Shown here in pieces: positions 4,975 through 38,249 of a stretch of DNA of 64,000 nucleotides. Within the stretch, counting starts at the first letter, position 1. Every line of letters begins with the position of its first letter. Under the pieces are notes generated by a model, which ran no database searches, was not told the origin of the DNA, and saw only the letters and a list, made by a program, of their open reading frames with translations. Origin of the DNA: Trichoplax adhaerens (Eukaryota > Animalia > Placozoa); the NCBI RefSeq assembly GCF_000150275.1, contig NW_002060943.1:12657694-12721693 (forward strand). Direction: 5' to 3'. The position numbers were made by a program, and so were the translations under genes.

Positions 4975-7900
4975 ATGGCAGAGGCTGTAATTCAACAGCG
5001 CAATTCTATTCTTGCTACTGCGAATCCACGATTTGTCAGAGGATACTATCAGCAATGTTTGACCCTCTACGATCAAGCTCTACAATGTACCTTAACCTTA
5101 CAGCAATTGCTAAACGATGATGATAACAATGACATCTGTAATCAAGCTTTATGTGATGATTATTTAAACTTATCCAAAACCTATTGTCGTCAACATCGTT
5201 ATGATAAAGCACGCAGTTATTGCGATCAGTCGCAGACCTTAGCAGTCAAGTTAAATGATAAACTACGTGTGGCTCATAGCCTTGATGCTTTTGGTAACAT
5301 TAAGAAAGAAATAGGCCAATATGAGGATGCACTCAATGATTTTGAAGCTGCGTTGAAATTAAAATTAGAACTGAAAGGGAAAGATAGCCAAGATGTTGCT
5401 CTATCCTACAGTTATATTGGTAATACGTATTCTATCATTGGAAAATTAGATGAAGCTAAGGAATCGCTATACAAGGTTATCGATCGTGACAAACACGTCT
5501 TACGCTTGGGGAATACTGTTACAAGTGTTGAATTAGTAGAGTCATTTAATGTGCTTGGATTTGTCTATTGTCTACAACGTAGATTTAGTCTATCGATGCT
5601 AATGCATAAGAAATGTCTCAAGTTGATCATGAGCCTGCTGAAAGATGATACCGCCAGCTTGGATCTTGCTCTGTGCTATGGCCATATAGGCATGATGTAT
5701 AGCTTACAAGATAGCTTTATTGAATCTACTTCGTGTCATGATAAAGCGATGAAAATGGCGCTATCGATAGCAGGCGAGAAATGTGTCGAAGTGGCACGAA
5801 TTTTTATATGGAAAGCCAAACTTAGTCAATCGAAAGGTGATGTTGGTGAAGCCATAAAGTATATGAAGAAAGCTCTAAAGATTCAAACGGATATATTAGG
5901 AAAGAAACATGTTCTAATTTCTGATGCCCATGACTTATTAGGTACACTGTATATGTCGCATGGGAAACTAGATGATTCGTTCACGTCTCTATTTATATCA
6001 CTAAATATTCGACAGGAAATACTTGGAGAAAATTGCTTGCCTGTTGCAACAGTATATGTATCAATAGGAAACATTTTCTTTCTAAAATCAAGCTATCTAG
6101 ATGCTTTAATGTACTACCGTAAGTCATTAGACATCCAATTAGATATTTTAGGCGATAATAGTTTAGATGTTGCGTCGTCTTATCATAACTTGGGCAATGT
6201 ATACGTGTCACTTGGGGACCCTGATGAGGCCTTACCTGCATACCAAAAATCTTTAGAGATTTTAATCCGACTTTTAGGAGAAGATCATATTGATGTTGCA
6301 GCTACTTATGAAGATCTGGGCCGATTTTTCGATAGACAACAAAAGTATGCTGAAGCACTACCCATGTTTCAAGCAGCGTTAAATAAACAAGTAGCCATTT
6401 TTGGCGATTCGAACGTTATTGTAGCTGGCTTATATGGCAAGGTAGGCGAAGTTCATCATCATTTAAACCAGGATGAAGAAGCTTTGCCTTTATATCGAAA
6501 GTCATTAGAGATATTTCAAAAATTTGGGGCGGAAAGCTATGGAGCTGTTGCGAAGACCCACAAATGCATCGCCGATAGTTATTATAATTTAAAGATGTAC
6601 AACGATGCTTTAGATCAATACAAACGCGCATTGTCAGTTAGGACCAAAGTTACAGGCGAATGCCATGTTGACGTAAATGAATTACGAGAAAAAATCGCTG
6701 CCATCTACAACAAGCAAAATAGATATGGCGATGCTATAGAAATGCATCAAAAAGCACTTGTCGCTAAAATAGCGCTGCTTGGAGAAGATCATCTCGAAAT
6801 CGCTGAAATACATGATACAATAGGTGGTCTTTACAGTTTACAAAATAAATTTGAAGATGCGCGTTCAGCATTCGACAAAGCTTTAAGCATTCGTAAAAGC
6901 AAAAAAGGAGAAAAGAGTCTAGATGTAGCTTTAACGTATGACCGCATTGCTACAATTGATATACAACTTAAATCGTATGACGATGCCTTAAAGTTGCTTG
7001 AAAAATCGTTAGCAATTCGAAAGGATATCCTCGGTGAAGACACTTTAGAAGTTGCTAGTTCTTATTCTCACATAGCTGCTGCTTATAAATGTCAAAACAA
7101 GTTTGAAAATGCTTTGTCCTATCTTGAAAAGGGATTAGCTATTAAATTACAGAAAGTGGGTGAAACTAGTGTCGAAGTTGCTGAATCATACAACAACATT
7201 GCCACCATTTACCAATATCAAAAACTATATGACATGTCATTGGTCTTGTTTAAAAGAAGCTTAGCAATTTTGATCAATCTGCTAGGTGAAGATACGTTGG
7301 AAGTGACTTCAGCAATTAACAATATTGCTAAAATTTATCAATTCCAGGGGAAAATGGAAAATGCAGTATCAATGTTTGAAAAATCGTTATCAATTCGTAT
7401 CAAATTAATGGGAGATTATGATCTAAATGTTGCCGATTCCTATAATAGCATTGGATATAGCTACTTAAAGCAGCATCGATACGATGAAGCGTTATTGAAT
7501 TATGAAAAAGTCTTAGTAATTCGACAAAGTATCCTTGGAGAAGATTCTTTCGATGTTGCAAATGCCTGTAATAATATAGGCTATGTCTATCAATCGAACA
7601 GTAAGTATCAAGATGCACTAGAGAAATTTATGAAAGCATTGTCTATTCAGAGAAACATCACAGGTGCCAATGGGCTAGATGTAGGTATTTCTTATCGAAA
7701 CATTGGGAGAATTCATGACAAACAACACAATTACAAGTACGCTGGACTGTTATTTCAGAAATCATTAACAATTCAAATTGAAACCTATAAAACACATCAT
7801 TTAGGTATTTGTGAAGGTTATTACGATGTTGGTAGGAATTTGGCACTACAATATCGTTTTGTTGAAGGCATTGAAAAGTATCAGAAATCGTTAACTGTGG

Positions 7901-10900
7901 CTATTTTACTTTGTGGTGAAAATAATGTTTATGCAGCATTAACGTTTAATGATATTGGTTGTATCTATCAATTGCAATGTCGTTATAACGATTCGTTGTC
8001 AATGTACGAGAAAGCTTTAAGAATGCGAGTGGAAGTATTGAGTGAAAATAGTTTAGCAGTAGGATTGACCTATTGTAACTTGGGCAGCTTGTCAGAGACA
8101 CAAGGCGATTATAATCAAGCATTGTCGTTTTATCGAAAATGCTGGAATATATGGCTATCTGTACTTGGAGATAACAACCTTAAAGTAGCTTTGGCCTCCG
8201 CTAATATTGCCAATATATATACGTTACAAGGAAAGTATGCTGATGCTGTTGCAATCTTTCAAAATGCTAGTAGCATTGTAAAAGAATCGGTTGGAGAAAG
8301 TGATATATATTACGCTAATCTATGTAATAAAATTGGTATCGCTTATCACCGACAAGGGAAGTATAATGATGCCCTATCGATGCACCAAAAGGCTGTAGAA
8401 ATACAAAAAATGATACTAGATGGCAAAAATTTACATGCTGCTGATTCTTACCGAAATATTGGTATAATCTATACATCACAAGGCAATTATGAACTTGCAA
8501 TATCGACATACCAGCAATCGTTAGAAATTTTGCGACAACTATTAACTGAGAAAAATTTAGCTATTGCCTACGTTAGGAACAACATTGCTAATACATTTCT
8601 ATTGCAAGGAAGACTTATCGATGCCTTAAATATCTTTCAACAATCTCTATCTCTTCAGAAGCAATTACTTGAAGAGAAATATTCCGTCATTGCAAAATCT
8701 TATGGCTCAATTGGATGTGTTTATTACAGAATGCATAAATATGATGAAGCTTTAACGAACTGTAGGAAATCGATTAGCATATTGGAAGAGTTGGACGAAG
8801 ATGCCAATTTAGATCTAGCGATGGCATACTCAAATATTGGATTAGTTTACAAAGCAATAGGAAAGTATGCGGAAGCATTTAAAATGCTTGATAAATGTTT
8901 AATGCTACAGTTAGAAAATATCACTGAGGAAAATTTTGATATCGCCGATACCTATAGTAACATCGGCCTCATTTACCAATCGCAAGGACAGTATGAGAAA
9001 GCAATTGCTGCTCATCAAAAATCGCTAGAAATTCGCCAGAGACTGGGCGGGGATAAATGTTTACAAGCAGCATGTACCTATCAAAATATTGGACTCATTT
9101 ATCAGCTACAAAGTAGATATGATGATGCCCAGTCATTCTCAATAAAAGCCTTAGAAATACAATTAGAAATTCAAGGAGAAATTAGTTCAGATGTTGCTAA
9201 AATTTATCGTAATCTAGCCGTGATACACATTTCGAGAGATGAACGACAAGCTGCTATGGATATGCTCGATAAATGTCTTAGTATAGAACTTAAGCTAACT
9301 GGAGAGGAAAGTTTAGAAGTAGCTCAATGCTATGAAGATATGGCAAAAATATTTCAATCAGAGGATAACATTGAAAAATTTAAAACTAATGTAAATAAGG
9401 CGTCAAAAATTCAATGGAAAATATTAGGACCCGACAAATTAACAAAGATTAAATCTCAGAATGGTCTTCAAGTGCGTTATAAATCTAACGAGTATTACAA
9501 TAATCTACTAGGTGAATTACAACAGTCTGTTAGTATGAGACTGTATTCTTGGATAGATATTCGTACTGATGTTATAAATTTGAATGGCGTCGTTGGATAT
9601 ACTCGGCAATTAACAGGTATTATATATAGTATTGGACTACTGTAATTATGGTTACGTGAGGATGTAAATATCGAGCCTATAACGAATTTTATATCTGATT
9701 TTTAATTATGTTAGAGAGTGTTAAACCGGACTATTTGAAGCCTGATAAAAGGCATGAAGCCAGAATTAGATATCAAAATCAAGACGATATCAAACTGGAA
9801 AGATATCTCTACCCAGGCATGACTGCAGGTAATGTGAGATAGAGATTGTTGAAATAGGCACGTTGTATCATGATTTTGTATTTCACAAAATACGTAAAAT
9901 TAAAGGGAGCATAATTTGAAAATAGTAACTGTTATATACGAATTATTCTACTGTAGTATATTCTCTTCTCAGAATTTGTGTAATCATTAAGTTCATTAAG
10001 TCGTATGTATTTATGGCCTAGAATAGTAGAGTCTATTAACGCGTAATTGATTTTATTTTAGCGGAAGAAGGACTTCCTGAAGTATCCAAATTATGTAAAA
10101 ATGATCGAGATACCATCATTGCCGTACCCAATGTGCCTGGACTGCAACTATTTATACCTGCGCAAAGCTTAGAAGATAGTATTCGATGCACTTTATCGGC
10201 TCTTTATGCCGATGCACCTTATATTAATGGAATACCTAATCAACCTAGTTTTCAGTTAATTCCTCTATCGACAATAGTTAGGATCGAGCCAAATATAAGT
10301 CTTGCTTATAACATTGATAATAATAATACCACCTTGCAAATACCTATGCCAGTAGCAGAAGAAGTAACGCAACACCTTGGTGTAGAGTCTGTTAAGTGTC
10401 TAGATATACGTATATTAAGCCGGAACAGAGATGGCGATGTTTGGAGAGAAGAATACATTGATTACCAGCATCGAATGGATGAAAATGGCTGTCCGTGTGT
10501 TGCTTTAGCGATCAGTCGCTTGGCAGATTACTTGGTCACCGCTACCGTTTATACTTCCAAATTATTACTACATAAAAATAGTTTTCCCAGCTATCAGCAA
10601 GATGTTTCTGTCTTGTGCTATCTTTCCGAGATTCATCGTGGTTCAAATAGGGTCCGTTTGAAAGTAGTTATCGCAAGAAAGAGCGATGACAATACGGAAA
10701 TTGTAGAGCAAATTCCGACCAAATTTCGCCACACTGAAGCTATTAGTACAGGGCTAGAAGGTACTATTTTGGAAAACGGCCGATATAGCGCCGAATTTAA
10801 AGAGGAAGAGCTGCAATGCGTACAAGAGGACAGTATTGTTCAACCTATCATCGTAGATTGGAACAGCTGTTCCTTTTATGTACTTAATTTTCTATGTCTT

Positions 10901-11697
10901 GTAAAAGACCCCAACAAAAAACTAGAAAAACTCTGCTCGATTGTCCTCAAACCTGAGAGCACTCAGATAGATTTACAGCCTAAATATTGCACTATAGAGG
11001 TTTGTAGACTGGGGACAACGTCAAATTTATTGTAGTAGATACTAAAATAATTAACTTGAAGTGCTACTAATAATCTATTTCTAATGGGTTATACTAATCC
11101 TTGAATAGAACGTAACATCAGAAAATGACAATAATAGCAATAGCCGGGATACTACTGATGAAAAGTTAAACCTCTCCGCCTTGCGAATAGGTACTTTGTT
11201 TACGTTAGAAATTAAGTTTCAGTGACTTCTGTTAGAGGATGATTTTTAATTCAGATCGTCTTTATTAAAGCGTGCAGCCTATGATAGCTGAGATATACGT
11301 CATGTGGTTTACGTCCTGACAAATTTATACCTTTTACCTTATAGAATATAGTTTAACTGTTACTACTGTGTTTATTAATTCTAATACATGCGCGTATCTT
11401 TTTTGTCTTGTTAACGTAGATACTAAGCTAAATTTTACTATTATTGCGGAAAAGATCGGTGATGATTGGGTTCAATTAGCAACATTATTAGATCCTAACA
11501 TTGCTACTGATGATATCGAATTGACTAAGCAAACATCAAACGATAAAGCTTTGTCTTGGCTAACAAGATGGCGTAGTCAACATGGATATACTGCAACCAA
11601 GGACAGTATAATTGAAGTGCTTGAACAAATCGATCGTCAAGATATTATCAAGCAAATTATTAATACTGCGGATTCCACTAATAAAGCGGATGCTTAA
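4975..11697 (+). CDS. TPR-repeat (kinesin-light-chain type, ~42-aa units, ~33 copies) protein with C-terminal ZU5-UPA-like and Death domains, ~2017 aa, 5 coding exons
   Basis: Exons 4975-9616, 9715-9828, 10062-10999, 11109-11190 and 11420-11697 join through GT-AG introns in consistent phase (1,1,0,1), giving 6054 nt of open frame. TPR consensus is VAxSYxNIGxxYxxQGxYxxALxxYxKSLxIxxxxLG. ZU5-like segment is GLQLFIPAQSL..LSTIVRIEP..LQIPMP..IRILSR..W..CVALAISRLADYLV, followed by a beta-rich UPA-like segment. Death domain is IAEKIGDDWVQLATLL..DIE..KALSWLTRW...G..AT..SIIEVLEQIDRQDI. Confidence 0.88.
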
Positions 11698-24383: not shown

Positions 24384-27300
24384 ATGATATTTATAATTGC
24401 TTTACAGATTTTCTTCCTGAGCTTTGGCGTACCAAGTTCTGCCGATGTCACTTTTACTCTTACTTATTTATCAACAATAACTGAATATGTAAGAGAAGTT
24501 AACAATAGTCCAAATGGAAAGCTATCATCTATTTCGACATTTGCTACTTTAACACCTAGTAGATATTCCAATCATGATAGACTAGCAAGCCAATTTGATC
24601 CATCTGTAAACTTTGGAAATAGCTTATTACCGTCTGAAACATCAGATGATTATTTTCAAACTTCTAATGAACAATCTAATATTGATGTATTGGCGTCATT
24701 GCAGTATGATGTTTCTAGTTTCTGGATAGCTAGTAATGTTCAAGCTGAAGTATCATCCATTATTGGTAGCAGTGCAGTGATAAATAGTTATGATTTGACT
24801 ATGATAAACTCACAGGATTTTACAACGATAATCGCCGATTACCAGGAATTCGAAAGCATTAGTCATACTGATGATTCTGTTCAAGCCACCATTATTGCTG
24901 TCCAAACGGAATCAATGATTTCATCGAATGATTCACCAATTATGTTATCATATGAAAGCCAAGACAGTCTAACTGGAAATGGTTTATCTTCCTCTAGTCC
25001 ACTAGATATTGCGACAACAACCGGTCTTCAAATATCTCAGTCGGAGCATCTATCACTAATAACGATGACTGAATTAAGCAAAGTTTCTTTAAATTTGCAA
25101 TCTTTGACATATTTGTCGACAGATACTACAATAATTAATTCCAACCAACTGGTTTCATCATTAACAGATACTGATAACTTTTTATCGTCATTTTCCCTTT
25201 CAAGGCCAATGTCTAGTAAATTATTGATATCCTCTGATACTTTAATGACACTATTAGATAACGTCAGTTTCGAATCGAAGCATTTAAGCTCTACTTTTGA
25301 ATATTTATCTTCATTCTTTACTTCTGGAATACCTGATATATCATCAATATCTTTGGATACATCAGCTAGAATATCTGAGATATCAGACTCTAATTCCTTA
25401 CAAGGTTGGATATCTGATAATGGATTTAAAACAACAAATGAATTGATGTATTCTTCTCGCATATCAACAATTAGCCTCCAATCAGTTGGCAATCCTCCCA
25501 GTTATTTATCATCGGCTAAAGATTTGCATACATTCAACTTCGATAATTTGCTCTCTACAATAACAGACTTGAGCAGTATAGCAAATATTCTACCAGTCCA
25601 GTCATCAGATATATTTGAGACAATGCAAACTACCGATACTGCGATAGCATCAACCATAAGATTAACCTCCCTTGATGATTTCACAAACTCTTCAACAGCG
25701 AAGTATTCGTCCGAAGAAATTTCCTTTGCTTCAGTTTTGAAGGTATCATCGGTAGTTTCTCTCATAATATCTGATGCGTCTGACAATTCTGTGGACTATT
25801 CGACCACTTCTATAATTTCAATGCTTGAATATCAATCACCTGGAAACCCTACCAATGTTTTATCATCGGTTCAGGAGATACAAATGTCGAACTCGGATAT
25901 GGTGCTTTCAACAATAACTGGTTCAATTACAATATCGAAACTTTTACCACTTTATTCATCAAAAATGGATGAGACATTGCAAGCTACTGCTTTACTGTCC
26001 AGTAACAAGCTTAAATCTGTCGATAATGACAAAGGTACAACAATGACTAATCAGTTATTCTATTTAACTACATTAATAACTGCTGATATTCTATCTGGCA
26101 GCGCTTTTAAGGATGATTTATCGACTACTGTTTATGGTATCCAGACATCAGTTTCGATTGATTTATTATCAACAAGAATAGATTCCAGTAAAGCATCGCA
26201 AATTTTACTACATCAATCGTCGGATATAGTTGAGACATCGCATACTATTAATCCATCATCAAATTTGGCAAAAACCTCTGTTGACAACTCTATCATATCT
26301 ACAGAAACGTATCTATCGGAAGAGGCTATTTCTACTGCTATATTTGGTATTGTATCCGAGATATCTTATACTCCTGAATTAAACTTGACATTCAATTACA
26401 AAAGTACACTAACTTATCAGTTATTCCATTTAACTTCATTAACGACTGTTGACGCTCTATCTAGCAACGCTTTCAAAGATGATTTATCGACTACTGCTTA
26501 TGAAATTCACACATTGAGTTCGGATATTTTGCAATCAACAGTTACAAATTCAAGTATAGTATTGCAAATGCTACCTCTTCAATCATCGGAATCGGGTTCA
26601 GATAGTTTACCATCGACAATAATAGATTCAAGTATAATATCGCAAGCTCTATCGTTTCAATCATCGGACATAACAGAGACGTCACAAGCTATTAGCAGTT
26701 TATTATCAAGTCTAGGTATAACCTCTGTTCAGAATTCTATAAGCTCTACAAAAAAGTATTTATCAGACGAAGTATTTTCTACTCTAATAAATAATATAGT
26801 TTCGGATGTATCTGATACTTTTGAAACTAACTTATTATCCGACTACGAAAGTACGACAGCTGATCGCTTATCCTATTCAAGTCGTCTAGAGACTCGTGGC
26901 TATCTATCTACAAGCGCTTTTGACGATGATATATCTTTTACTACAAATGATATCAAAACACTGGACTCCAATAACTTACTATCGACAATAACAGATTCAA
27001 GTACAGTATCGCAATTTATACCATTGCAATCAACAGATATAGCTGAAACGTTACAAGCTACAGACAGTATATTATCAAGCTTAGAGAAAGCGTCTGTTGA
27101 GAACTCTATAATATCTACAGAAACATATCTGACGGACGAGCTAGCTTCTACTCTAATATATGATATAGATTCGGATATATCTGATACTTCTGGAATAAAT
27201 CTGTTATCTGATTACAAAAGTACAATAGCCGATTCGCTATTCTATCGTACTACATTAGTAACTCTAGATGTTCTATCAAGTAGCTCTATTAAGGATGATT

Positions 27301-30300
27301 TATCGATCGCTACTAACAATGTCCAGACATCGGATTCGGATAGCTTACTATCGACAATATTAGATTCAAGTATAATATCGCAAGCTCTATCGTTTCAATC
27401 ATCGGATATAACAGAGACGTCACAAGCTATTAGCAGTTTATTATCAAGTCTAGGTATAAATTCTGTTCAGAATTCTATAAGCTCTACAGAAAAGTATTTA
27501 TCAGACGAAGTATTTTCTACTCCAATAAATAATATAGTTTCGGATGTATCTGATACTTTTGAAACTAACTTATTATCCGACTACGAAAGTACGACAGCTG
27601 ATCGCTTATCCTATTCAAGTCGTCTAGAGACTCGTGGCTATCTATCTACAAGCGCTTTTGACGATGATATATCTTTTACTACAAATGATATCAAAACACT
27701 GGACTCCAATAACTTACTATCGACAATAACAGATTCAAGTACAGTATCGCAATTTATACCATTGCAATCAACAGATATAGCTGAAACGTTACAAGCTACA
27801 GACAGTATATTATCAAGCTTAGAGAAAGCGTCTGTTGAGAACTCTATAATATCTACAGAAACATATCTGACGGACGAGCTAGCTTCTACTCTAATATATG
27901 ATATAGATTCGGATATATCTGATACTTCTGGAATAAATCTGTTATCTGATTACAAAAGTACAATAGCCGATTCGCTATTCTATCGTACTACATTAGTAAC
28001 TCTAGATGTTCTATCAAGTAGCTCTATTAAGGATGATTTATCGATCGCTACTAACAATGTCCAGACATCGGATTCGGATAGCTTACTATCGACAATAATA
28101 GATTCAAGTATAATATCGCAAGCTCTATCGTTTCAATCATCGGATATAACAGAGACGTCACAAGCTATTAGCAGTTTATTATCAAGTCTAGGTATAACCT
28201 CTGTTCAGAATTCTATAAGCTCTACAGAAAAGTATTTATCAGACGAAGTATTTTCTACTCCAATAAATAATATAGTTTCGGATGTATCTGATACTTTTGA
28301 AACTAACTTATTATCCGACTACGAAAGTACGACAGCTGATCGCTTATCCTATTCAAGTCGTCTAGAGACTCGCGGCTATCTATCTACAAGCGCTTTTGAC
28401 GATGATATATCTTTTACTACAAATGATATCAAAACACTGGACTCCAATAACTTACTATCGACAATAACAGATTCAAGTACAGTATCGCAATTTATACCAT
28501 TGCAATCAACAGATATAGCTGAAACGTTACAAGCTACAGACAGTATATTATCAAGCTTAGAGAAAGCGTCTGTTGAGAACTCTATAATATCTACAGAAAC
28601 ATATCTGACGGACGAGCTAGCTTCTACTCTAATATATGATACAGATTCGGATATATCTGATACTTCTGGAATAAATCTGTTATCTGATTACAAAAGTACA
28701 ATAGCCGATTCGCTATTCTATCGTACTACATTAGTAACTCTAGATGTTCTATCAAGTAGCTCTATTAAGGATGATTTATCGATCGCTACTAACAATGTCC
28801 AGACATCGGATTCGGATAGCTTACTATCGACAATAATAGATTCAAGTATAATATCGCAAGCTCTATCGTTTCAATCATCGGACATAACAGAGACGTCACA
28901 AGCTATTAGCAGCTTATTATCAAGTCTAGGTATAACCTCTGTTCAGAATTCTATAAGCTCTACAGAAAAGTATTTATCAGACGAAGTATTTTCTACTCCA
29001 ATAAACATAGTTTCGGATGTGTCAGATCCTTCTGCAATAAACCTGTCATCTAGTTATAAAAGTACAACAGCTGATCAGTTATTTCAGTTAACCACATTAA
29101 CAGCTCTGGATTTTCTGTCAAGCAGCACTTTTAATAACGAATTATCGACAATCATCAATGATATCCAGATATCTTATTCAGACAGTCCATTATCGAGGAT
29201 AATTGATTCAAGTACAATACCACTACTTTTAAATACTCAATCATTAGATACAATAGAAACATCGCAAGCAACGGTCCGTTCTTCATATATCGAATCAAAA
29301 TCGGCTGATGAGTCTTCCATCCAGCCTACTCATGTCTATCTATCACAAAAAACTCTATTCACTCAAGTTACTTATACATTATCACCAGTTTTGGATACCT
29401 TGATTGCTACATCAGATTCGTCTGATTTTAATTCAGGAGAAGCCTTTGTATCTTATTACCATTCCGAATCGTTTGATTTACTTGATTCTTCTATAATAGG
29501 GAAGTCTAGTCCTCAATTGCTAACCACTATTGGTAGCCAATTATCTGTTGATGATACCCAAATATCTCAATCTGATAATTCTCTATATACCGAAAATAAA
29601 TTAACCAGCAAGTTGCAGATATTGTCCATACAGTCTTCGGTAACAACTGAATCCTCAGCTACGACAAAATTTACAACAAATGTACCATTACAAACGATCT
29701 CTACCGAATTTGTTAGCAATTTGCCTCGTAGGACAACTTCTAGCGTAGAGGAATATTCTAGCAGCGAATCTTTCGGACCGGAAGAAAATTTGAAGAGTCT
29801 ATCCACATTTTTGCAAGGAGTAATTTCTACTTCTATCTTACCAACGTCAAGCTTATCGCCAGAATCCATTAGAGAATTCACAGAATTAACGTCTACTAGT
29901 AAATTCTCGCAGTATTTATTATCAACTTCTACAGTGTTAGAAAGCCATGAAGGTACAGGTGCTATTGCAAGCCCATCTCATTCATCTACGCCATTCCTGT
30001 CATCTTTCCAAGCAGCAACGAGCTTAATTTCTGATTTGCAAGTGCAACTATCAACTCTTACAACAAATCCAGAAAGTACTCCTTTTATCTTTACTCCAAC
30101 ACATCAATTCGAGCTGACTATCGGTACTTCTTCAGTTTATTTGCAATCAGGATCGATCTCAGACGTGTCCTACGAATCTTTAGCATTGGTACCTAGTTTA
30201 GCTAGTACTAGTGGCAAACCATTTTTGGAACTTACTGAGACTCTACCAACGATATCCAGCCTTCAAGTCATTTCATCAAGCGATGCTGGCACATCAATAT

Positions 30301-33300
30301 CCCTTAATTCAGTCGTGCGTTCTGAACAAACTGTACAAGAAACTGTGTTCTATTCAAATATCTTTACCAGCTTAACATTACCGTCTAAAGGTGATATATT
30401 AAGTCAAACTTCTTCAGGATCTGAAATATCAACTAATGAAGTTTCCCCTTCCACAAGTAGTCTGGGTCTAACTTTTAGCTTATTCTCAAGTGACACCTTA
30501 ACAGCTGGAACATTTCATACTATCTCTTCATCCTTTGCACCATCGATCCAATCATCAGCACCGCTATCGCAATCTTCGAAGCAAACGGATAGTGAAACTG
30601 TTACAAATATTGAATCGAGCATTAATTCTATTACCAAAAGTAACATCCAAGATTCGATATTCAGTCAAACTCATGCTGAATACTCCACTATGATTAGCAG
30701 TTTCATGGCGATATCTTCCTCAGGACTGAGCTTGACTATTAGCTTTTCATCTTCATCCTATCACGAAAATTTAGATACCCTATCAACATTTGCATCGTTC
30801 AATCCTAGTCGTTCCTATTCCTTGTTCAGTGATGGTCAGAGCCTTGAATCTTCCTTTTCCTTTAGCTCATCTCTATTATCTTATATTAACACTGAAAAGA
30901 GTCTTTCAACGGGGCTACCGATAACCGAATCGATCAGTCTGTACTCTGCTAACTCTCAATCCATCAAATTGTCGGCAACGGCCATCTCTCAAGCTGGTAT
31001 AGAGAGTAGTAGTGAACAAATAAACAATCTATATTCTACAAGTTTGCAATTCTTCACATCACCTACGGCGGCAGTTTCCCAAGCGAAGAAAGAAAGCAGT
31101 GGTAAACTGTTTACTATTCCCACTACGATATCAACTCTGATAGAAACGAAACCAACAACTGAACTATCTACTACCATACTTTCAGCACTAGAATCCGACT
31201 CGTCGCTCGTTCCATCCAGTCTTTCAGGTTTTGCCTCTACGAAATTGCAACAGGAAGAGTCCTCATATGTAACCGTAATGCAAATCAGCTCGGACGTTAA
31301 CACCTGGTCAAGTTCAATCAATATTATTGCGACTTCTAGTGCATTTTCTGATAATTTAGATGGCATAACAACTATTTTATCTCAAGCTACAATATTATCA
31401 TCTAAAATATCTTATAATGTTGCATTGAGTAGCCGGGTAGCTACAATTACTTCCATACCATCAAAAATAGAAACATCTGCATTTATTACAAGTGAGAGTA
31501 CTCTAATACAAAATGGTATTAGCCAAAGCTTTTCTGTTCTATCATCCGACGCTTCCGTTTCTGCACATAGTTCCTCCATCTCGTCAGCGATTATCGAAAG
31601 TACGCAATCTATAGAGTCTAATATTGGGCCAACAGTATCCACCAGCAGCATTTTACCCACATCGCCTCCAGCAACAACATCTGGAGCGATCAGTAATCCT
31701 ACAACTACAACTACAGATCCATGCCAAAATCAGCCATGTGGTCCTTTAGCTATATGTCTCAAACGAGATCCTACACAAAATAATACTCTACCTTACTACT
31801 GCCAATGTCGCATTGGTTATTATCCATCAAATTTAAATGTAATTTTGTCATTTGGAGACAATTGCATAGGCAAGTAATGTATCATAACTTCATTTCAGCA
31901 AGTTTAAAGACCTGGGTATTAACTAGGAGGAAATACAGAGATTAGATGCGATAATCGACTTATAGTATTGTAGTAAATGTTAGATCAATGTCTCTTTATA
32001 CTGTATCAGCATAGAAAACAATTTGATAGTGTTACGGAGCTAATAGCTCCTACAAACAAATAAGCACTTCGCATTTATTTAGCTTTATTGATTACTAATG
32101 TAGCTTACCTCACAAGCGGCCAAACAGCAAGCAATTAATAGTGGATTGATTAGTATATTGTAAAATAAAGTGCTATTATAATGTAGTATGAGAATACTAT
32201 AGCTCACTATACAACTTAGGTGTTACTTGCATATGAATTGACAGAGCAATCTAATATCTAATCATACATATTAATGGTTAGTATCGTATAAGTATGTTTA
32301 CTAAATGTTACTTCGTGGATAATTAGTAAGCTATTTAATTGCAGACATGATCGCTAAATACTCTTTTAGAACAAAATATAAATTGTGGTACTCCTTAAAA
32401 TTATAAATATGCCAAAGACAGTAATACTATATCAGATAAGATGAATAATTTGATATGATTGCGGTTCTGTTTCAGTCGGATTATTTTTCTATGGTTATAT
32501 CTCTTTAAATTTACCCTTCAATATTGAATTTAATAACCCGAATAACGGCCTCGGCAGAGCCATTAGGCAACAAAGTAGAGCTCAGGTATATTATATGTAA
32601 AGATGGTTGATTTTTCCTCTGAATAATTTATAAACTATTCAATATTAAAATTCGAAGGTGACTAGCATCATTAGGAACTCCAAAAATATTGGGCGGGATT
32701 TTGTCCATGTTATTATTATTGGTTTAAGGTACTCATATTTAAAGTAAAATATTGCAAGGGTGATCAATAATTTACTTTCTCTGACAATTTATCGATATGT
32801 TATCTTGTGTAACAGGCCTGGCAGTACGATTGTAGATTTTTATATTGTGTATAAAAATAATGCAACAGCAACCAGTGAGAATATCCAACTAAATCTTCAA
32901 GAAGGAATGCAATCCATAGATGGATACAATATTACAAGGACCAATGTAACAAGTAAATGGATTGTAACTAGAATTTAGCATAATCATAAATGTTCCATAT
33001 TAAACAATTATAAATGCTAGCTAATGTGGCTAATTGAGAAAGGCGGGTTATAAAAGCGCTAAAATTTTATTGCTTTGTGATATTAGGTACTAAATTTATT
33101 TCTTTATTTTTATTTATAGTTGCTGATGTTTGCCAGGCTGAAAATGATCCCTGTTCTGGCCTACAGCAAGTTTGCCTTGAAAATAAAAATCGATTCATTT
33201 GTGAGAGCTGTCCTACTGGCTATCAATTTAATGCTACAATCAAAAATTGTTTAGGTGTCGAGAGCTACTTAATACAATTAGACCATATTAAAAGCCGATA

Positions 33301-35173: not shown

Positions 35174-36390
35174 GGTTAAATTTTTCAGTAGATTTAATTA
35201 ATATTTTCTGATGGATGTAGTAGGATGATATAAATATTACAGAAAATCTTGCATTGGTGTAATGCAAGCACATGATTTAGCTGTTTCTTAAAATATTTTA
35301 CTAAAATATATTCATTTTTCTTCCTGTATTCCTTTAGTATAAAATATTTCAGGCGTAATGCAATTATATAAGACATAGTAAGGAGAGTTGAATTTCTAGT
35401 CCCAAATCAGGGACGCATCTGAAAAAGGCGATGATAATAGCAACTAGAACGGACCTATCTACTTATTAACTTTCAATAAGACTTTAGTATTTTCGAGTAA
35501 ACTTAAATCAGATTTAAAGTCCGTAAATTCCTGCTATGGTATGCAATTTAACGAAAGAACAAATATGAGAATAAAATTACTGCTTCAAAATGGCCCAAAT
35601 TTTCAAAGTAGCAAACTTTATTTTGGACTTACTGGCTTTATCCGGATTTTTCTGTTTAATTTGGAAATATACGGTAAAAGAAAGCTTGTTTATAAATCTC
35701 AAGATATAATAGTCTTTATGGACAAGGGAAATAATGCATTTCGAACTTCACTTGGTCGTTTCTGTCGATACCTGCAAAATCATTCAAATGAGATTTAAAT
35801 AATCTGTGATATAAATGTTGGGAAGAAGCACAAAATTAGTCCCTATTGCTGTCCAGGTCCAGAAATTAAAAACTTATAAAAAAAAATTACAATTTTTCAA
35901 GATGATCAATGCTAGTGTACCACAAGCAACATTAACCCTATTTGTGGGAGAAAAATTTAATTTTTTATATGTAAATGGGTTAGAAATGACGTGCGGTAAA
36001 GTTTCTATTCTTCTAATATTATAAACAAAGTACTCAAAGTAATCAGCTTTCAAAATAGATCTTGTTTAAGTTATTCGTATACGTATACGTGGATTTTAAA
36101 ACTATAAATTGATAAATTATCCAAACACCCCGATTAAGTTACTGTAAATCAAATTATTATTGACTTGTACGTATCTTGCAAAGGTTGCAACGGAAAAAAT
36201 TAAGGTTAAAAAATTTGATTCAGCATCCTTTAATATTTTACGTTTTTAATATTTTTAGTTAATTATTAAATTAAATTAAAAGATTTTTAAAATGATTTTA
36301 ACCATATAAACTAGTTTATGTGTTTTTGTAATAATCTTGTTAACGGTACGGGTAAATGCAATTATGAAATCGTAGAAATTTGCGCATGTA

Positions 36391-36849
36391 NNNNNNNNNN
36401 NNNNNNNNNNNNNNNNNNNNNNNNNNNNNNNNNNNNNNNNNNNNNNNNNNNNNNNNNNNNNNNNNNNNNNNNNNNNNNNNNNNNNNNNNNNNNNNNNNNN
36501 NNNNNNNNNNNNNNNNNNNNNNNNNNNNNNNNNNNNNNNNNNNNNNNNNNNNNNNNNNNNNNNNNNNNNNNNNNNNNNNNNNNNNNNNNNNNNNNNNNNN
36601 NNNNNNNNNNNNNNNNNNNNNNNNNNNNNNNNNNNNNNNNNNNNNNNNNNNNNNNNNNNNNNNNNNNNNNNNNNNNNNNNNNNNNNNNNNNNNNNNNNNN
36701 NNNNNNNNNNNNNNNNNNNNNNNNNNNNNNNNNNNNNNNNNNNNNNNNNNNNNNNNNNNNNNNNNNNNNNNNNNNNNNNNNNNNNNNNNNNNNNNNNNNN
36801 NNNNNNNNNNNNNNNNNNNNNNNNNNNNNNNNNNNNNNNNNNNNNNNNN
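36391..36849. other. Assembly gap (459 N)
   Basis: Run of N. Confidence 1.
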
Positions 36850-38249
36850 TATCAACTGGTCTTGAAAATCTATTTGCTCTTGCTCTATTTATGAAAATTC
36901 TGAGATATTCAAATATTATATCATGTATTACAATTACTAATTAATAAATTAGGCTATTTTGAATGCTACTTATCTAAAAGAATTCATCTATAGCTCATTT
37001 TAGATGAAAAAGATAATCCTTGGTTTGACTTTTTACATATAAAATTTCTGTCTATAACTATATAACTGTGCTATATCTTAATTATACCTTCATACGAAAA
37101 TCAATTATTTTTTATTCTGATTTATAGCAGCATAGATTATAAATACAATATCTATCTTTGTTGCGAGTTAGGGCTAATTCTGGCACTATGATACCAGTTT
37201 ATAATATAATTTTGAAGTTGTTATTAGTATAATCTCTAATTTGTTAGATAAAAATCAACCAGTATATAAATATTATTAATTATCAAGAACATTTTTACTA
37301 CCATACTGAATTCAGTAGTCAATATGCTCAATTCTCTAAATTACTATATTTTGGTTACGTACGCAGATTGTTAGAGCTGGGTTATTAAATAAGTTATCAA
37401 GATAATGCAATTTTGTAGCTCTCCTGTTGACGAATGGTAATCCTAATTCCGTTGCTGTATTGTTTAAGTTAAAGAATTCCTAACTGATTTTATCACTTGC
37501 AGCATTACCAAAGAATACATAATTACTGATGGCTACTATTTATTTAGACGGGATTCTTCTACAGTTACCAAACATGCTTTCAAATATTTCTGTACTTATG
37601 CTAATAATAAAATTTTAAAGATTTCCAGACTTTTAGTTAAACATTACTTAGAAATTTAGATACAAAGACTAATCTAGTAAGATATTTTTAACTTGAACTC
37701 CAAATTTACAATTTTATAAGATGATGACCTGCTTGATATGTTATATCATATTTATATTAGTTATAGCAATAATTATATCATGTATTTCAAAATGATTATT
37801 TGATATATCAGTTTACTTCAAAGTCAAATCAGCTAAAGAAATCAGTAATTACTCATGTTAGAGAGATAAAATCGTAATCCTTAACTTAAGTGACATAAGA
37901 TTCTTGGATGCAACTATATTAAAAATGCGTTCACATTAATTAAATAATTTCTGTCATAGTAATGGGTATTTAATCTATAGACGTACGCATATAACTTTTT
38001 CTCGTGCATTATCGACTCAACTATACAGGGAAACGACCTTTAATATAAAGTTCTTAATGCTTGATCTATAAAAAAATTTTAACCACTCTTTTAATTGCAT
38101 TTTCATGATAATACTATTTATCTTGTAGTTTTCTTTAACATTTATCATTCAAATTTTCTGATAGCGTTATATGAATCATTTTGAAGTAACTTAGGTCTAA
38201 GTCACAAGGTTGTCTGACTCCGTATGTTATCATCGTAGCTTTAGCTTTC

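What the first reader, a model, noticed from the sequence alone, without database searches (positions are those of the whole stretch)
4975..11697. TPR-ZU5-UPA-Death fusion: a PIDD/ankyrin-like signalling module carrying a ~33-TPR sensor
Seen: the ORF track shows three separate ORFs, but in-phase GT-AG splicing, including two small unlisted exons (9715-9828, 11109-11190), joins them into one ~2017-aa protein. Established: the ZU5-UPA-DD supramodule occurs behind LRRs (PIDD), ankyrin repeats (ankyrins) and an Ig/TSP ectodomain plus TM (UNC5). I do not know of it behind a long TPR solenoid. The position equivalent to PIDD's HFS autocleavage motif reads SRLADY, so it probably does not self-cleave there. 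Inference: this may be a cytosolic sensor that nucleates a PIDDosome-like death-fold platform without an NB-ARC/NACHT ATPase.
Basis: partly seen in the sequence, partly recalled or inferred. Interest (0 to 1): 0.82.

Follow-up and report, generated by a model that had tools for sequence, protein, structure and literature searches.

The report
Placozoan TPR–ZU5–UPA–Death domain gene
This is one intact five-exon Trichoplax adhaerens gene that joins 34 TPR repeats to an ankyrin/PIDD-type ZU5-UPA-Death module; it belongs to a barely described placozoan gene family and has lost the self-cleavage motif that most of its relatives keep.

Summary
The three ORFs and two mini-exons join through four in-phase GT-AG introns into a 2017-codon reading frame.

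- **One gene.** Two metagenome contigs from a second, divergent placozoan-like genome carry the same exons in the same order. Splice sites sit at the same codon positions, and DNA similarity stops at the exon ends.
- **TPR array.** Exon 1 holds 34 regular 42-residue KLC/NPHP3-type TPRs and no NTPase domain.
- **ZU5-UPA.** Pfam sees nothing in the 312-aa middle exon. An AlphaFold model (pLDDT 85) matches ankyrin-B ZU5-UPA-DD (Foldseek E 4e-10, Z 14.3), UNC5B and the NLRP1/CARD8 FIIND.
- **Death domain.** The last exon is a Pfam Death domain (E 1e-11), closest to ankyrin death domains.
- **Cleavage motif.** The HFS-equivalent site reads R-L-A here and E-L-A in the orthologue. Thirteen of 17 relatives keep H-[FLY]-[SC].

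The gene is not unique. The genome gives at least 24 matches to this exon, several of them behind TPRs and ahead of Death domains. This scan had already met the family on other DNA of this genome (s1-741765). A role as a sensor or death-fold platform remains inference. I class it as a new variant of a known kind.

The parts
4975..9616 (+). Exon 1. It runs from the start codon ATG at 4975 to the donor G|GT at 9616/9617 and encodes 1547 residues plus the first base of the junction codon.
   Evidence: ORF. The donor was read. The same caatt[ag]acag|gta donor occurs in the orthologue L035. Pfam finds TPR families only: TPR_12 E 3.9e-210, TPR_NPHP3 7e-91, and no Roc, COR, NACHT or NB-ARC.
5158..9435 (+). 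Array of 34 consecutive 42-residue TPR units (residues 62-1487), kinesin-light-chain / nephrocystin-3 type.
   Evidence: A self-built repeat HMM gives 34 clear units, mostly spaced exactly 42 residues apart. Pfam finds 21 TPR_12 stretches.
9436..9616 (+). Conserved non-TPR tail of exon 1 (residues 1488-1547), the first part of a roughly 100-residue linker to ZU5.
   Evidence: The last 107 residues of exon 1, which include this tail, are 65% identical to the orthologue, and the match ends at the same ...YTRQLT donor. Pfam finds nothing in the last 105 residues of exon 1 (window 9301-9615).
9715..9828 (+). Exon 2, 114 nt (phase 1 to 1). It is the second part of the linker and ends in the motif YPGM.
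   Evidence: GT-AG and phase were read. It is 54% identical to the orthologue (tblastn E 9e-12), with the same acceptor and donor positions. The ...LFPGM.. / ..IFPGF.. motif sits directly before ZU5 in paralogue models P0005, P0006 and P0002.
10062..10999 (+). Exon 3, 938 nt, encoding the ZU5-UPA pair (312 full codons, 10064-10999).
   Evidence: AlphaFold2 with alignment A1 gives pLDDT 85.4. Foldseek: 4d8o E 4.1e-10, 3g5b 1.9e-8, 7crw 9.2e-5. VIA-align Z 14.3 to ankyrin-B residues 1121-1417. The own genome gives 24 matches, and paralogues keep this as a single exon.
10064..10552 (+). ZU5 domain (exon-3 residues 1-163).
   Evidence: Z 13.1, rmsd 2.5 A over 129 residues to the ankyrin-R ZU5 (3f59). 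Profile A2 hits ankyrin-2 ZU5B at E 0.0056. Distant homologues P0018, P0021 and P0023 carry Pfam ZU5 within or overlapping the stretch that aligns with this part of the exon. Pfam itself finds nothing in this copy.
10517..10525 (+). R-L-A at the position of the H-F-S autoproteolysis triad, at the end of ZU5.
   Evidence: Column comparison in alignments A1 and A2: 13 of 17 relatives have H-[FLY]-[SC], the orthologue P0003 has E-L-A, and ZU5 proteins that Pfam recognises have HFS/HFC/HFT.
10589..10999 (+). UPA domain (exon-3 residues 176-312).
   Evidence: Z 9.6, rmsd 3.3 A over 118 residues to the CARD8 UPA (7jn7_C), and Z 9.6 to the NLRP1 FIIND (7crv_B). The domain is continuous with ZU5, as in ankyrin-B and UNC5B.
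11109..11190 (+). Exon 4, 82 nt (phase 0 to 1), a short Ser/Asn/Asp-rich linker. It is the least certain exon.
   Evidence: GT-AG and phase were read. The orthologue has an open 97-nt exon of the same phase behind the same ttgaatag acceptor (L035 2186-2282), with no significant sequence similarity. A paralogue model (P0012 on L022) has a 30-residue exon at the same place.
11420..11697 (+). Exon 5, holding the Death domain (Pfam match about 11434-11664) and the stop codon TAA at 11695-11697.
   Evidence: Pfam Death E 1.2e-11, 45 bits against a cut-off of 22.6. The best solved relatives are the ankyrin-3 DD (6.9e-5), THOC1 DD and ankyrin-1/2 DD, with PIDD DD at 0.11. The start of the orthologue's exon is 50% identical, behind a conserved acceptor.

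Best explanation
**Shown.** Window 4975-11697 (+) is a single five-exon gene of Trichoplax adhaerens. It encodes a 2017-residue protein with no signal peptide, transmembrane segment or NTPase. The order of parts is:
- 34 tandem 42-residue KLC/NPHP3-type TPRs;
- a conserved linker of about 100 residues;
- one ZU5 domain, then a UPA domain;
- a short linker, then a Death domain.

This is the ZU5-UPA-DD supramodule of ankyrins, UNC5 and PIDD, placed behind a TPR solenoid. The gene belongs to a family found so far only in placozoans, with at least 24 genomic matches to the ZU5-UPA exon, many clustered at 12.55-13.25 Mb of the same scaffold. Most members keep the H-F-S/C triad at the ZU5/UPA boundary, the triad used for autoproteolysis by PIDD, NLRP1 and CARD8. 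This gene and its orthologue have R-L-A / E-L-A there.

**Inferred.** The protein stays uncleaved and works as one chain, in the manner of UNC5B and ankyrin. There, ZU5 packs on UPA and DD and keeps the Death domain shielded. I propose that the TPR solenoid binds a ligand or partner, that binding or clustering opens the supramodule, and that the exposed Death domain recruits other Death-domain proteins into an oligomeric platform for cell-death or immune signalling, without a STAND ATPase. Given the family's expansion and divergence, a role in defence or damage sensing is the most likely biology.
For: **Gene model.**
- In-phase GT-AG junctions.
- Orthologous contigs L035/L036 are colinear. Amino-acid identity is 65% for the last 107 residues of exon 1, 54% for e2, 54% for ZU5, 46% for UPA and 50% for the DD start. 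Splice sites are conserved at the same codon positions. DNA similarity is confined to exons.
- A public Trichoplax sp. H2 model of a paralogue (RDD38356.1) maps on L022 with the same layout: large exon, small exon, 312-residue exon, small exon, terminal exon.

**Domains.**
- TPR families only in e1, in 34 units.
- ZU5-UPA fold: pLDDT 85, Foldseek E 4e-10 to 4d8o, Z 14.3 (whole model vs 4d8o), 13.1 (ZU5) and 9.6 (UPA).
- Profile hit to ankyrin-2 ZU5B at E 0.0056.
- Relatives carry Pfam ZU5.
- The language-model neighbours are ZU5, UPA and FIIND clusters.
- Death domain at E 1e-11.

**Family.**
- 24 matches in the own genome.
- TPR lies upstream on the same strand at four loci, and a DD lies downstream at four.
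- Only 24 hits among 1.84 billion representative proteins. All those with a named source are Trichoplax.

**Motif loss.**. The tree puts the window gene with P0003 (100/100) inside a group that otherwise carries the motif.
Against: - No transcript evidence was available.
- Exon 4 is supported only by phase, splice-site conservation and analogy with paralogue models.
- Pfam does not see ZU5 or UPA in this copy at any threshold. The fold assignment rests on a model built from a shallow alignment of 22 sequences.
- The relative orientation of ZU5 and UPA differs from the crystal structures (rmsd about 13 A over both domains). The joined protein was not folded, so the closed-supramodule idea is untested.
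- Nothing measures ligand binding, oligomerisation or partners.
- The Death domain and the ZU5-UPA pair are closest to ankyrin, which is a cytoskeletal adaptor and not a death signaller.
Confidence: 0.6

Rival explanations
1. It is an ankyrin-like structural adaptor. The TPR solenoid replaces the 24 ANK repeats as a cargo-binding platform. ZU5 binds a spectrin-like or other cytoskeletal partner, and the Death domain has a regulatory rather than a signalling role.
For: The best structural matches of ZU5-UPA are ankyrin-B, -G and -R. The best sequence matches of the Death domain are the ankyrin-3, -1 and -2 death domains. Like the ankyrin ZU5B, it lacks the catalytic His and Phe.
Against: Trichoplax already has a canonical ankyrin (PMC5135030). 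This gene sits in a fast-diverging, tandemly clustered family: about 35% identity between paralogues, broken copies, and most members carrying an autoproteolysis motif. That pattern is typical of conflict or immune genes, not of cytoskeletal adaptors. It has only one ZU5, and in ankyrin the spectrin-binding domain is ZU5A.
Confidence: 0.15
2. It is a non-cleavable regulator or decoy. The cleavable HFS-bearing paralogues would be the real sensors, working by N-terminal degradation that releases UPA-DD, as in NLRP1 and CARD8. This copy would have lost cleavage and would hetero-oligomerise with them through UPA or DD to damp or tune their signalling.
For: The H-F-S loss is shared with the orthologue, so it is old and has been kept under constraint (46-65% amino-acid identity elsewhere in the gene). 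Most paralogues keep the triad. UPA-mediated oligomerisation and the negative regulation of NLRP1 by a CARD8 isoform are published (PMC7794386, PMC9679424, listed and not read in depth).
Against: There is no evidence that any paralogue cleaves itself or that paralogues interact. This gene has the longest and most regular TPR array seen here, which suits a sensor better than a mere damper.
Confidence: 0.15
3. The model is an artefact. The TPR ORF and the ZU5-UPA-DD exons are separate genes, or the downstream part is a dead relic.
For: There are no transcript data. Two word searches seeded from exon 1 (candidate length 851-2707 aa) and one exhaustive search with exon 3 found no public protein model containing this exact locus. 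Some paralogue copies are broken (stop codons).
Against: All five exons are open. Exon 2 has no start codon in the orthologue, yet it is conserved with identical splice positions. DNA conservation is confined to exons across a divergence of about 50-65% amino-acid identity. That pattern is what purifying selection on a spliced mRNA produces.
Confidence: 0.05

Closest known systems
Ankyrin-B/G/R ZU5-ZU5-UPA-DD tandem (PDB 4d8o, 6m3q, 3f59)
   Same: ZU5, UPA and Death domain come in this order behind a long alpha-solenoid repeat array. It is the best structural match (Foldseek E 4e-10, Z 14.3) and the best Death-domain sequence match (E 7e-5). Like ankyrin ZU5B, this ZU5 has no HFS triad.
   Different: There is one ZU5 instead of two, and 34 TPRs instead of 24 ANK repeats. 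Sequence identity is 14-16%. The gene is a member of an expanded placozoan family, not the conserved single-copy ankyrin, which Trichoplax also has.
UNC5B cytoplasmic ZU5-UPA-DD (PDB 3g5b)
   Same: It has a single ZU5 followed by UPA and DD, and it is not self-cleaving. In my recollection of the UNC5B structure it adopts a closed, autoinhibited supramodule; that is the model for the mechanism proposed here. Foldseek E 1.9e-8, Z 10.8.
   Different: UNC5 is a transmembrane netrin receptor with an Ig/TSP ectodomain. This protein has no signal peptide or membrane segment, and it senses, if it senses at all, through cytosolic TPRs.
PIDD1 (LRR-ZU5-ZU5-UPA-DD)
   Same: It is a cytosolic protein with a repeat solenoid in front of ZU5-UPA-DD. 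Paralogues of this gene carry the same H-F-S motif, and a distant relative (P0023) is LRR+ZU5 with HFCWY.
   Different: This gene has TPR instead of LRR, one ZU5 instead of two, and an HFS triad replaced by R-L-A. PIDD-C/PIDD-CC-type processing is therefore not expected.
FIIND-CARD of NLRP1 and CARD8
   Same: It has a ZU5-UPA pair directly upstream of a death-fold domain. The UPA match is Z 9.6 (7jn7_C, 7crv_B). Family members with HFS could in principle work by the same cleavage-and-release logic.
   Different: The death-fold here is a Death domain, not a CARD. There is no cleavage motif in this copy and no NACHT-LRR. One paralogue (RDD38356.1 on L022) may end in a CARD (Pfam E 0.0078, below threshold).
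Trichoplax TPR-Roc-COR-Death/CARD ROCO proteins (Civiero et al. 2014, as cited in PMC11378527)
   Same: It is a placozoan expanded family that joins TPR arrays to death-fold domains and is proposed to be receptor-like.
   Different: This gene has no Roc GTPase or COR domain. A ZU5-UPA pair sits in their place.

Membership tests
ZU5-UPA-DD supramodule proteins (ankyrin / UNC5 / PIDD type) | A ZU5 beta-sandwich fold | tested here: met
   Model residues 5-161 align to the ankyrin-R ZU5 with Z 13.1 and rmsd 2.5 A over 129 residues. Profile A2 hits ankyrin-2 ZU5B at E 0.0056.
ZU5-UPA-DD supramodule proteins (ankyrin / UNC5 / PIDD type) | A UPA domain directly after ZU5 | tested here: met
   Residues 176-312 align with Z 9.6 to the CARD8 and NLRP1 UPA. 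The whole model aligns to ankyrin-B 1121-1417 (Z 14.3) and UNC5B 541-825 (Z 10.8).
ZU5-UPA-DD supramodule proteins (ankyrin / UNC5 / PIDD type) | A Death domain C-terminal to UPA in the same polypeptide | tested here: met
   Pfam Death E 1.2e-11 in exon 5. It is linked to exon 3 by in-phase introns conserved in the orthologue and in paralogue models P0005, P0008 and P0009.
ZU5-UPA-DD supramodule proteins (ankyrin / UNC5 / PIDD type) | Sequence membership in Pfam ZU5 (PF00791) and UPA (PF17217) | tested here: not met
   There is no ZU5 or UPA hit for exon 3 even at E 10. Six of 22 family members reach ZU5 at E up to 1, the best at 0.0035. P0002 reaches 26 bits against a cut-off of 21.
ZU5-UPA-DD supramodule proteins (ankyrin / UNC5 / PIDD type) | Closed packing of ZU5 on UPA and DD | not tested
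   Only exon 3 was modelled.
PIDD1 | N-terminal leucine-rich repeats | tested here: not met
   Exon 1 hits only TPR families.
PIDD1 | H-F-S autoproteolysis triad at the end of ZU5 | tested here: not met
   R-L-A at window 10517-10525.
PIDD1 | Two tandem ZU5 domains | tested here: not met
   Only one ZU5 was found. The roughly 100 residues between the last TPR and ZU5 are too short for a second one and have no Pfam hit.
FIIND-CARD proteins (NLRP1, CARD8) | A ZU5-UPA pair with an SF|S / HF|S cleavage site, followed by a CARD | tested here: not met
   The fold is present (Foldseek 7crw E 9e-5). The motif is absent, and the C-terminal domain is Death (Pfam E 1.2e-11), not CARD; Pfam lists no CARD hit for exon 5 even at E up to 10.
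Ankyrins | 24 ANK repeats plus a ZU5A-ZU5B-UPA-DD tandem | tested here: not met
   There are no ANK repeats and only a single ZU5.
STAND / NLR receptors and ROCO proteins | A NACHT, NB-ARC or Roc-COR NTPase switch | tested here: not met
   No such Pfam family occurs in any exon.
KLC / NPHP3-type TPR proteins (Pfam TPR_12, TPR_NPHP3) | Tandem 42-residue TPR_12 units | tested here: met
   TPR_12 E 3.9e-210 and TPR_NPHP3 304 bits against a cut-off of 100; 34 units.

The most novel reading that the evidence does not exclude
Placozoans have a class of cytosolic sensors that needs no STAND ATPase or Roco GTPase. TPR solenoids are wired straight to an autoproteolytic ZU5-UPA module and a death-fold domain. 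The HFS-bearing members would fire by NLRP1/CARD8-like degradation of the N-terminal part and release of UPA-DD. This conserved non-cleaving member would be either a ligand-opened UNC5-type switch or a built-in brake on its cleavable paralogues. That would place FIIND-type sensing logic in an early-branching animal lineage.
Probability: 0.2. Interest if true: 0.8.

Novelty: new variant of a known kind. Interest (0 to 1): 0.55.

Why it matters
The ZU5-UPA-death-fold module is the business end of PIDD, UNC5, ankyrins and the NLRP1/CARD8 inflammasome sensors. How and when it was joined to different sensor arrays is poorly known, because its sequence diverges beyond the reach of standard domain models.

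This gene is a complete, intact example with a conserved orthologue. It shows that placozoans couple the module to very long TPR solenoids and have multiplied the combination. Public annotation misses this, because Pfam finds no ZU5 or UPA in these proteins. The papers I read on placozoan immunity and on ZU5 or death-fold proteins do not mention it.

The family also offers a natural contrast between members with and without the HFS triad. That contrast makes the role of autoproteolysis testable in a simple animal. For this single gene, however, function remains inferred, and the scan had already met the family at other loci.

Tried and rejected
**Searches that found nothing useful**
- Pfam on exon 3, exon 2, exon 4 and the exon-1 tail at E up to 10 gave no ZU5 or UPA. 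The only hit was a spurious DUF1687.
- phmmer of exon 3, and of profile A1, against PDB sequences gave nothing meaningful. Only the wider profile A2 reached ankyrin-2.
- Single-sequence AlphaFold failed with pLDDT 32.
- Two word-index protein searches, seeded from exon-1 residues 1380-1547 and 1-260, found only distant TPR proteins and no public model of this gene.

**Paralogue with an apparent very long open frame.** The paralogue L007 appeared to lie in an open frame of 3440 aa. That was an artefact of N runs in the assembly.

**Alternative splicing that skips exon 4.** I considered a donor at 11019/11020 joined to an acceptor at 11351/11352. It is in frame, but it uses a poor donor and would translate the polypyrimidine tract of intron 4.

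**Upstream exons.** Pfam finds only TPR families in exon 1, and 4975 is the first possible start codon after an upstream stop. I did not search systematically for upstream exons.

**Literature.** Three full-text searches and six papers gave no description of TPR-ZU5-UPA-Death. Absence from this library is weak evidence.

Full report
**Source.** The window is G000:C1414:12657694-12721693 of a 105.6-Mb assembly in 1414 contigs. Paralogous proteins from the same 13,260,704-nt scaffold are GenBank entries of Trichoplax adhaerens, for example XP_002109091.1. The organism is therefore the placozoan T. adhaerens. GC content is about 30%.

**Observation.**
- The three ORFs are present at 4975-9645, 10133-11035 and 11368-11697.
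- I read the junctions in the sequence. Exon 1 ends at 9616 (acag|gtat). Exon 2 is 9715-9828 (gttag|ag ... gcag|gtaa). Exon 3 is 10062-10999 (ttttag|cg ... agag|gttt). Exon 4 is 11109-11190 (aatag|aa ... atag|gtac). Exon 5 is 11420-11697 (cgtag|at ... TAA).
- The phases are 1, 1, 0 and 1. The junction codons are GAG, GCG and GAT.

**Is it one gene?** I had no transcript data, so I used comparison.
- The closest relative of exon 3 in a library of 1.84 billion representative proteins is P0003, at 51% identity. It is encoded on two short metagenome contigs, L035 and L036 (ENA ERZ27263980 and ERZ23499115, GC 31%).
- These contigs are colinear with the window. They carry a TPR tail whose last 107 residues are 65% identical and end at the same YTRQLT, then an exon-2 homologue (54%, E 9e-12), then ZU5 (54%), UPA (46%) and the start of a Death domain (50%) at the contig end.
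- The donor and acceptor of each intron sit at the same codon position as in the window.
- Between UPA and the Death domain, the orthologue has an open 97-nt exon of phase 0 to 1 behind the same ttgaatag acceptor as exon 4.
- At the DNA level, similarity is limited to window 9001-9623, 9764-9832 and 10084-10906. Introns do not align.
- Exon 2 has no start codon in the orthologue, so it cannot begin a separate gene.
- Paralogue gene models agree. The residues just before ZU5 in P0005, P0006 and P0002 carry the same ..[FY]PG[MF].. motif that ends exon 2.
- The Trichoplax sp. H2 model RDD38356.1 maps on the T. adhaerens locus L022 with the same layout: large exon, small exon, 312-residue exon, 30-residue exon, terminal exon.
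- I put the single-gene reading at about 0.9. Exon 4 is the least secure part.

**Domains.**
- Exon 1 gives only TPR families in Pfam (TPR_12 E 3.9e-210, TPR_NPHP3 304 bits) and no NACHT, NB-ARC, Roc or COR.
- A repeat HMM built from the protein itself finds 34 units, almost all exactly 42 residues apart, over residues 62-1487.
- Exon 5 is a Death domain (Pfam E 1.2e-11). Its nearest solved relatives are the ankyrin-3, THOC1, ankyrin-1 and ankyrin-2 death domains. PIDD is weaker, at 0.11.

**The middle exon.**
- Pfam and PDB sequence searches find nothing in this exon. A single-sequence fold failed.
- With an alignment of 22 family members (A1), AlphaFold2 gave pLDDT 85.4.
- Foldseek ranks the ankyrin-B ZU5-ZU5-UPA-DD tandem first (4d8o, E 4.1e-10). 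Next come AnkB/spectrin, UNC5B (3g5b, 1.9e-8) and the NLRP1 FIIND (7crw, 9.2e-5).
- VIA-align gives Z 14.3 over both domains. Residues 5-161 against the ankyrin-R ZU5 give Z 13.1, rmsd 2.5 A over 129 residues. Residues 176-312 against the CARD8 UPA give Z 9.6, rmsd 3.3 A over 118 residues.
- Three further lines agree. A wider profile (A2) hits ankyrin-2 ZU5B at E 0.0056 with the classic SPIV.LEP...P motif aligned. The distant homologues P0018, P0021 and P0023 have Pfam ZU5 within or overlapping the stretch that aligns with exon-3 residues 3-167. The protein-language-model neighbours are ZU5, UPA and FIIND clusters.
- I therefore take ZU5-UPA as established at the level of a predicted fold.

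**The cleavage motif.**
- In A1 and A2, the column that reads S-R-L-A-D-Y here reads S-H-F-S-D-Y in most paralogues. Thirteen of 17 have H-[FLY]-[SC].
- The ZU5 proteins that Pfam recognises read HFS, HFC or HFT there. One of them is P0023, an LRR-ZU5 protein resembling PIDD.
- The window gene has R-L-A and its orthologue E-L-A. His, Phe and the nucleophile are all gone, and the loss is shared between the two.
- In a maximum-likelihood tree of 18 rows, the two form a 100/100 pair inside a group of 12 whose other members all carry the motif. Rows with fewer than 200 aligned residues were left out. The support for the group itself is modest (82/84), and the root is a midpoint only.
- With the motif also present in the distant ZU5 proteins, loss in this lineage is the simplest reading.
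- Other T. adhaerens clades likewise pair with proteins of the second organism. The subfamilies are therefore older than that split.

**The family.**
- Exon 3 has 24 matches in the genome at E up to 0.001. Ten lie at 12.55-13.25 Mb of the same scaffold. One lies only about 1-1.8 kb before the window start.
- In 10-kb stretches around 21 loci, TPRs lie upstream on the same strand at four loci (this gene, L016, L017, L020). A Death domain lies downstream at four (this gene, L014, L019, L020). Some copies carry stop codons or abut assembly gaps.
- Outside Trichoplax and the unnamed metagenome organism, nothing closer than generic ZU5 proteins was found.
- Earlier notes of this scan describe the same family at other loci (s1-741765, s1-739347). 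They also describe the published TPR-Roc-COR-Death ROCO family. My census overlaps theirs at the 12.555-12.559 Mb locus. The ROCO family is documented through PMC11378527, which cites Civiero et al. 2014.

**Mechanism (inferred).**
- Without the triad, the protein should remain one chain.
- The nearest working models are UNC5B and ankyrin. In my recollection of the structural literature, which I did not test here, ZU5 packs against UPA and DD there and masks them.
- I propose that the TPR solenoid is the binding surface, that engagement or clustering opens the module, and that the Death domain then recruits Death-domain partners.
- Expansion, clustering, rapid divergence and decayed copies point to defence or damage sensing rather than a housekeeping scaffold. 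This is analogy, not evidence.
- The rivals are an ankyrin-like adaptor, a non-cleaving regulator of its cleavable paralogues, and a wrong gene model.

**Known or new?**
- The module and each of its domains are known. Repeat-solenoid plus ZU5-UPA-DD is known with LRR (PIDD) and ANK (ankyrin).
- I found no description of the TPR version in the papers searched.
- Public records name the relatives only 'Nephrocystin-3', 'Death domain-containing protein' or 'hypothetical protein'.
- I class it as a new variant of a known kind, and as a clean reference member of a family this scan has already met.

**Limits.**
- The spliced protein was never joined, searched or folded as a whole. All work was exon by exon, by reference.
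- The fold rests on a shallow alignment.
- The identity of the organism behind L035/L036 is unknown.
- No experiment bears on function.

Noticed in passing
window 24384-31877 (+): A single 2497-residue ORF has a signal-peptide-like N-terminus, 35% Ser+Thr, and long internal repeats: near-identical stretches occur around residues 1001 and 1501. It has no convincing Pfam domain. It looks like a secreted mucin-like protein.
   Followed up: partly
window about 36390-36860: An assembly gap (a run of N) lies inside the apparent ORFs at 36318-36944. Those ORFs are artefacts.
   Followed up: partly
L028 7856-8743 (G000:C1414:12655855-12656742, about 1-1.8 kb before the window start): A neighbouring paralogous ZU5-UPA exon lies on the same strand (40% identity over ZU5 residues 5-95). 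No Death domain for it was found inside the window.
   Followed up: partly
L022 1349-7553 (G000:C1391, about 493.8-500.1 kb): This paralogue corresponds to Trichoplax sp. H2 RDD38356.1 (1876 aa). It has N-terminal TPRs, a 938-residue exon with no Pfam hit, a ZU5-UPA with R-T-G at the HFS site, and a terminal 107-residue exon with a weak full-length CARD match (Pfam E 0.0078, below threshold). It may be a TPR-ZU5-UPA-CARD protein, the death-fold arrangement of CARD8 and NLRP1.
   Followed up: partly
G000:C1414 12.55-13.25 Mb: Ten of the 24 genomic matches to the ZU5-UPA exon lie in the last 0.7 Mb of this scaffold. This is a subterminal cluster of the family.
   Followed up: no
L020 2146-6085 (G000:C1295): This is a complete colinear TPR, ZU5, UPA, Death copy, but with a TAG inside the ZU5-UPA exon. 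It is a pseudogene or a sequencing error.
   Followed up: no
L035 and L036 (ENA ERZ27263980, ERZ23499115): Two metagenome assemblies hold AT-rich eukaryotic contigs with an orthologue of this gene at about 50-65% amino-acid identity. The proteins P0007, P0010, P0011, P0013 and P0014 pair in the same way with other T. adhaerens clades. Their sources were not looked up; they may come from the same divergent placozoan-like organism in environmental data.
   Followed up: partly
L030 4863-7007 (G000:C1344) and L018 (G000:C976): Some family members have a Death domain upstream of ZU5. P0031 has Death 509-585 and then ZU5 721-776. P0006 has Death 10-79 and then ZU5-UPA. The module is therefore shuffled among several architectures.
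   Followed up: no
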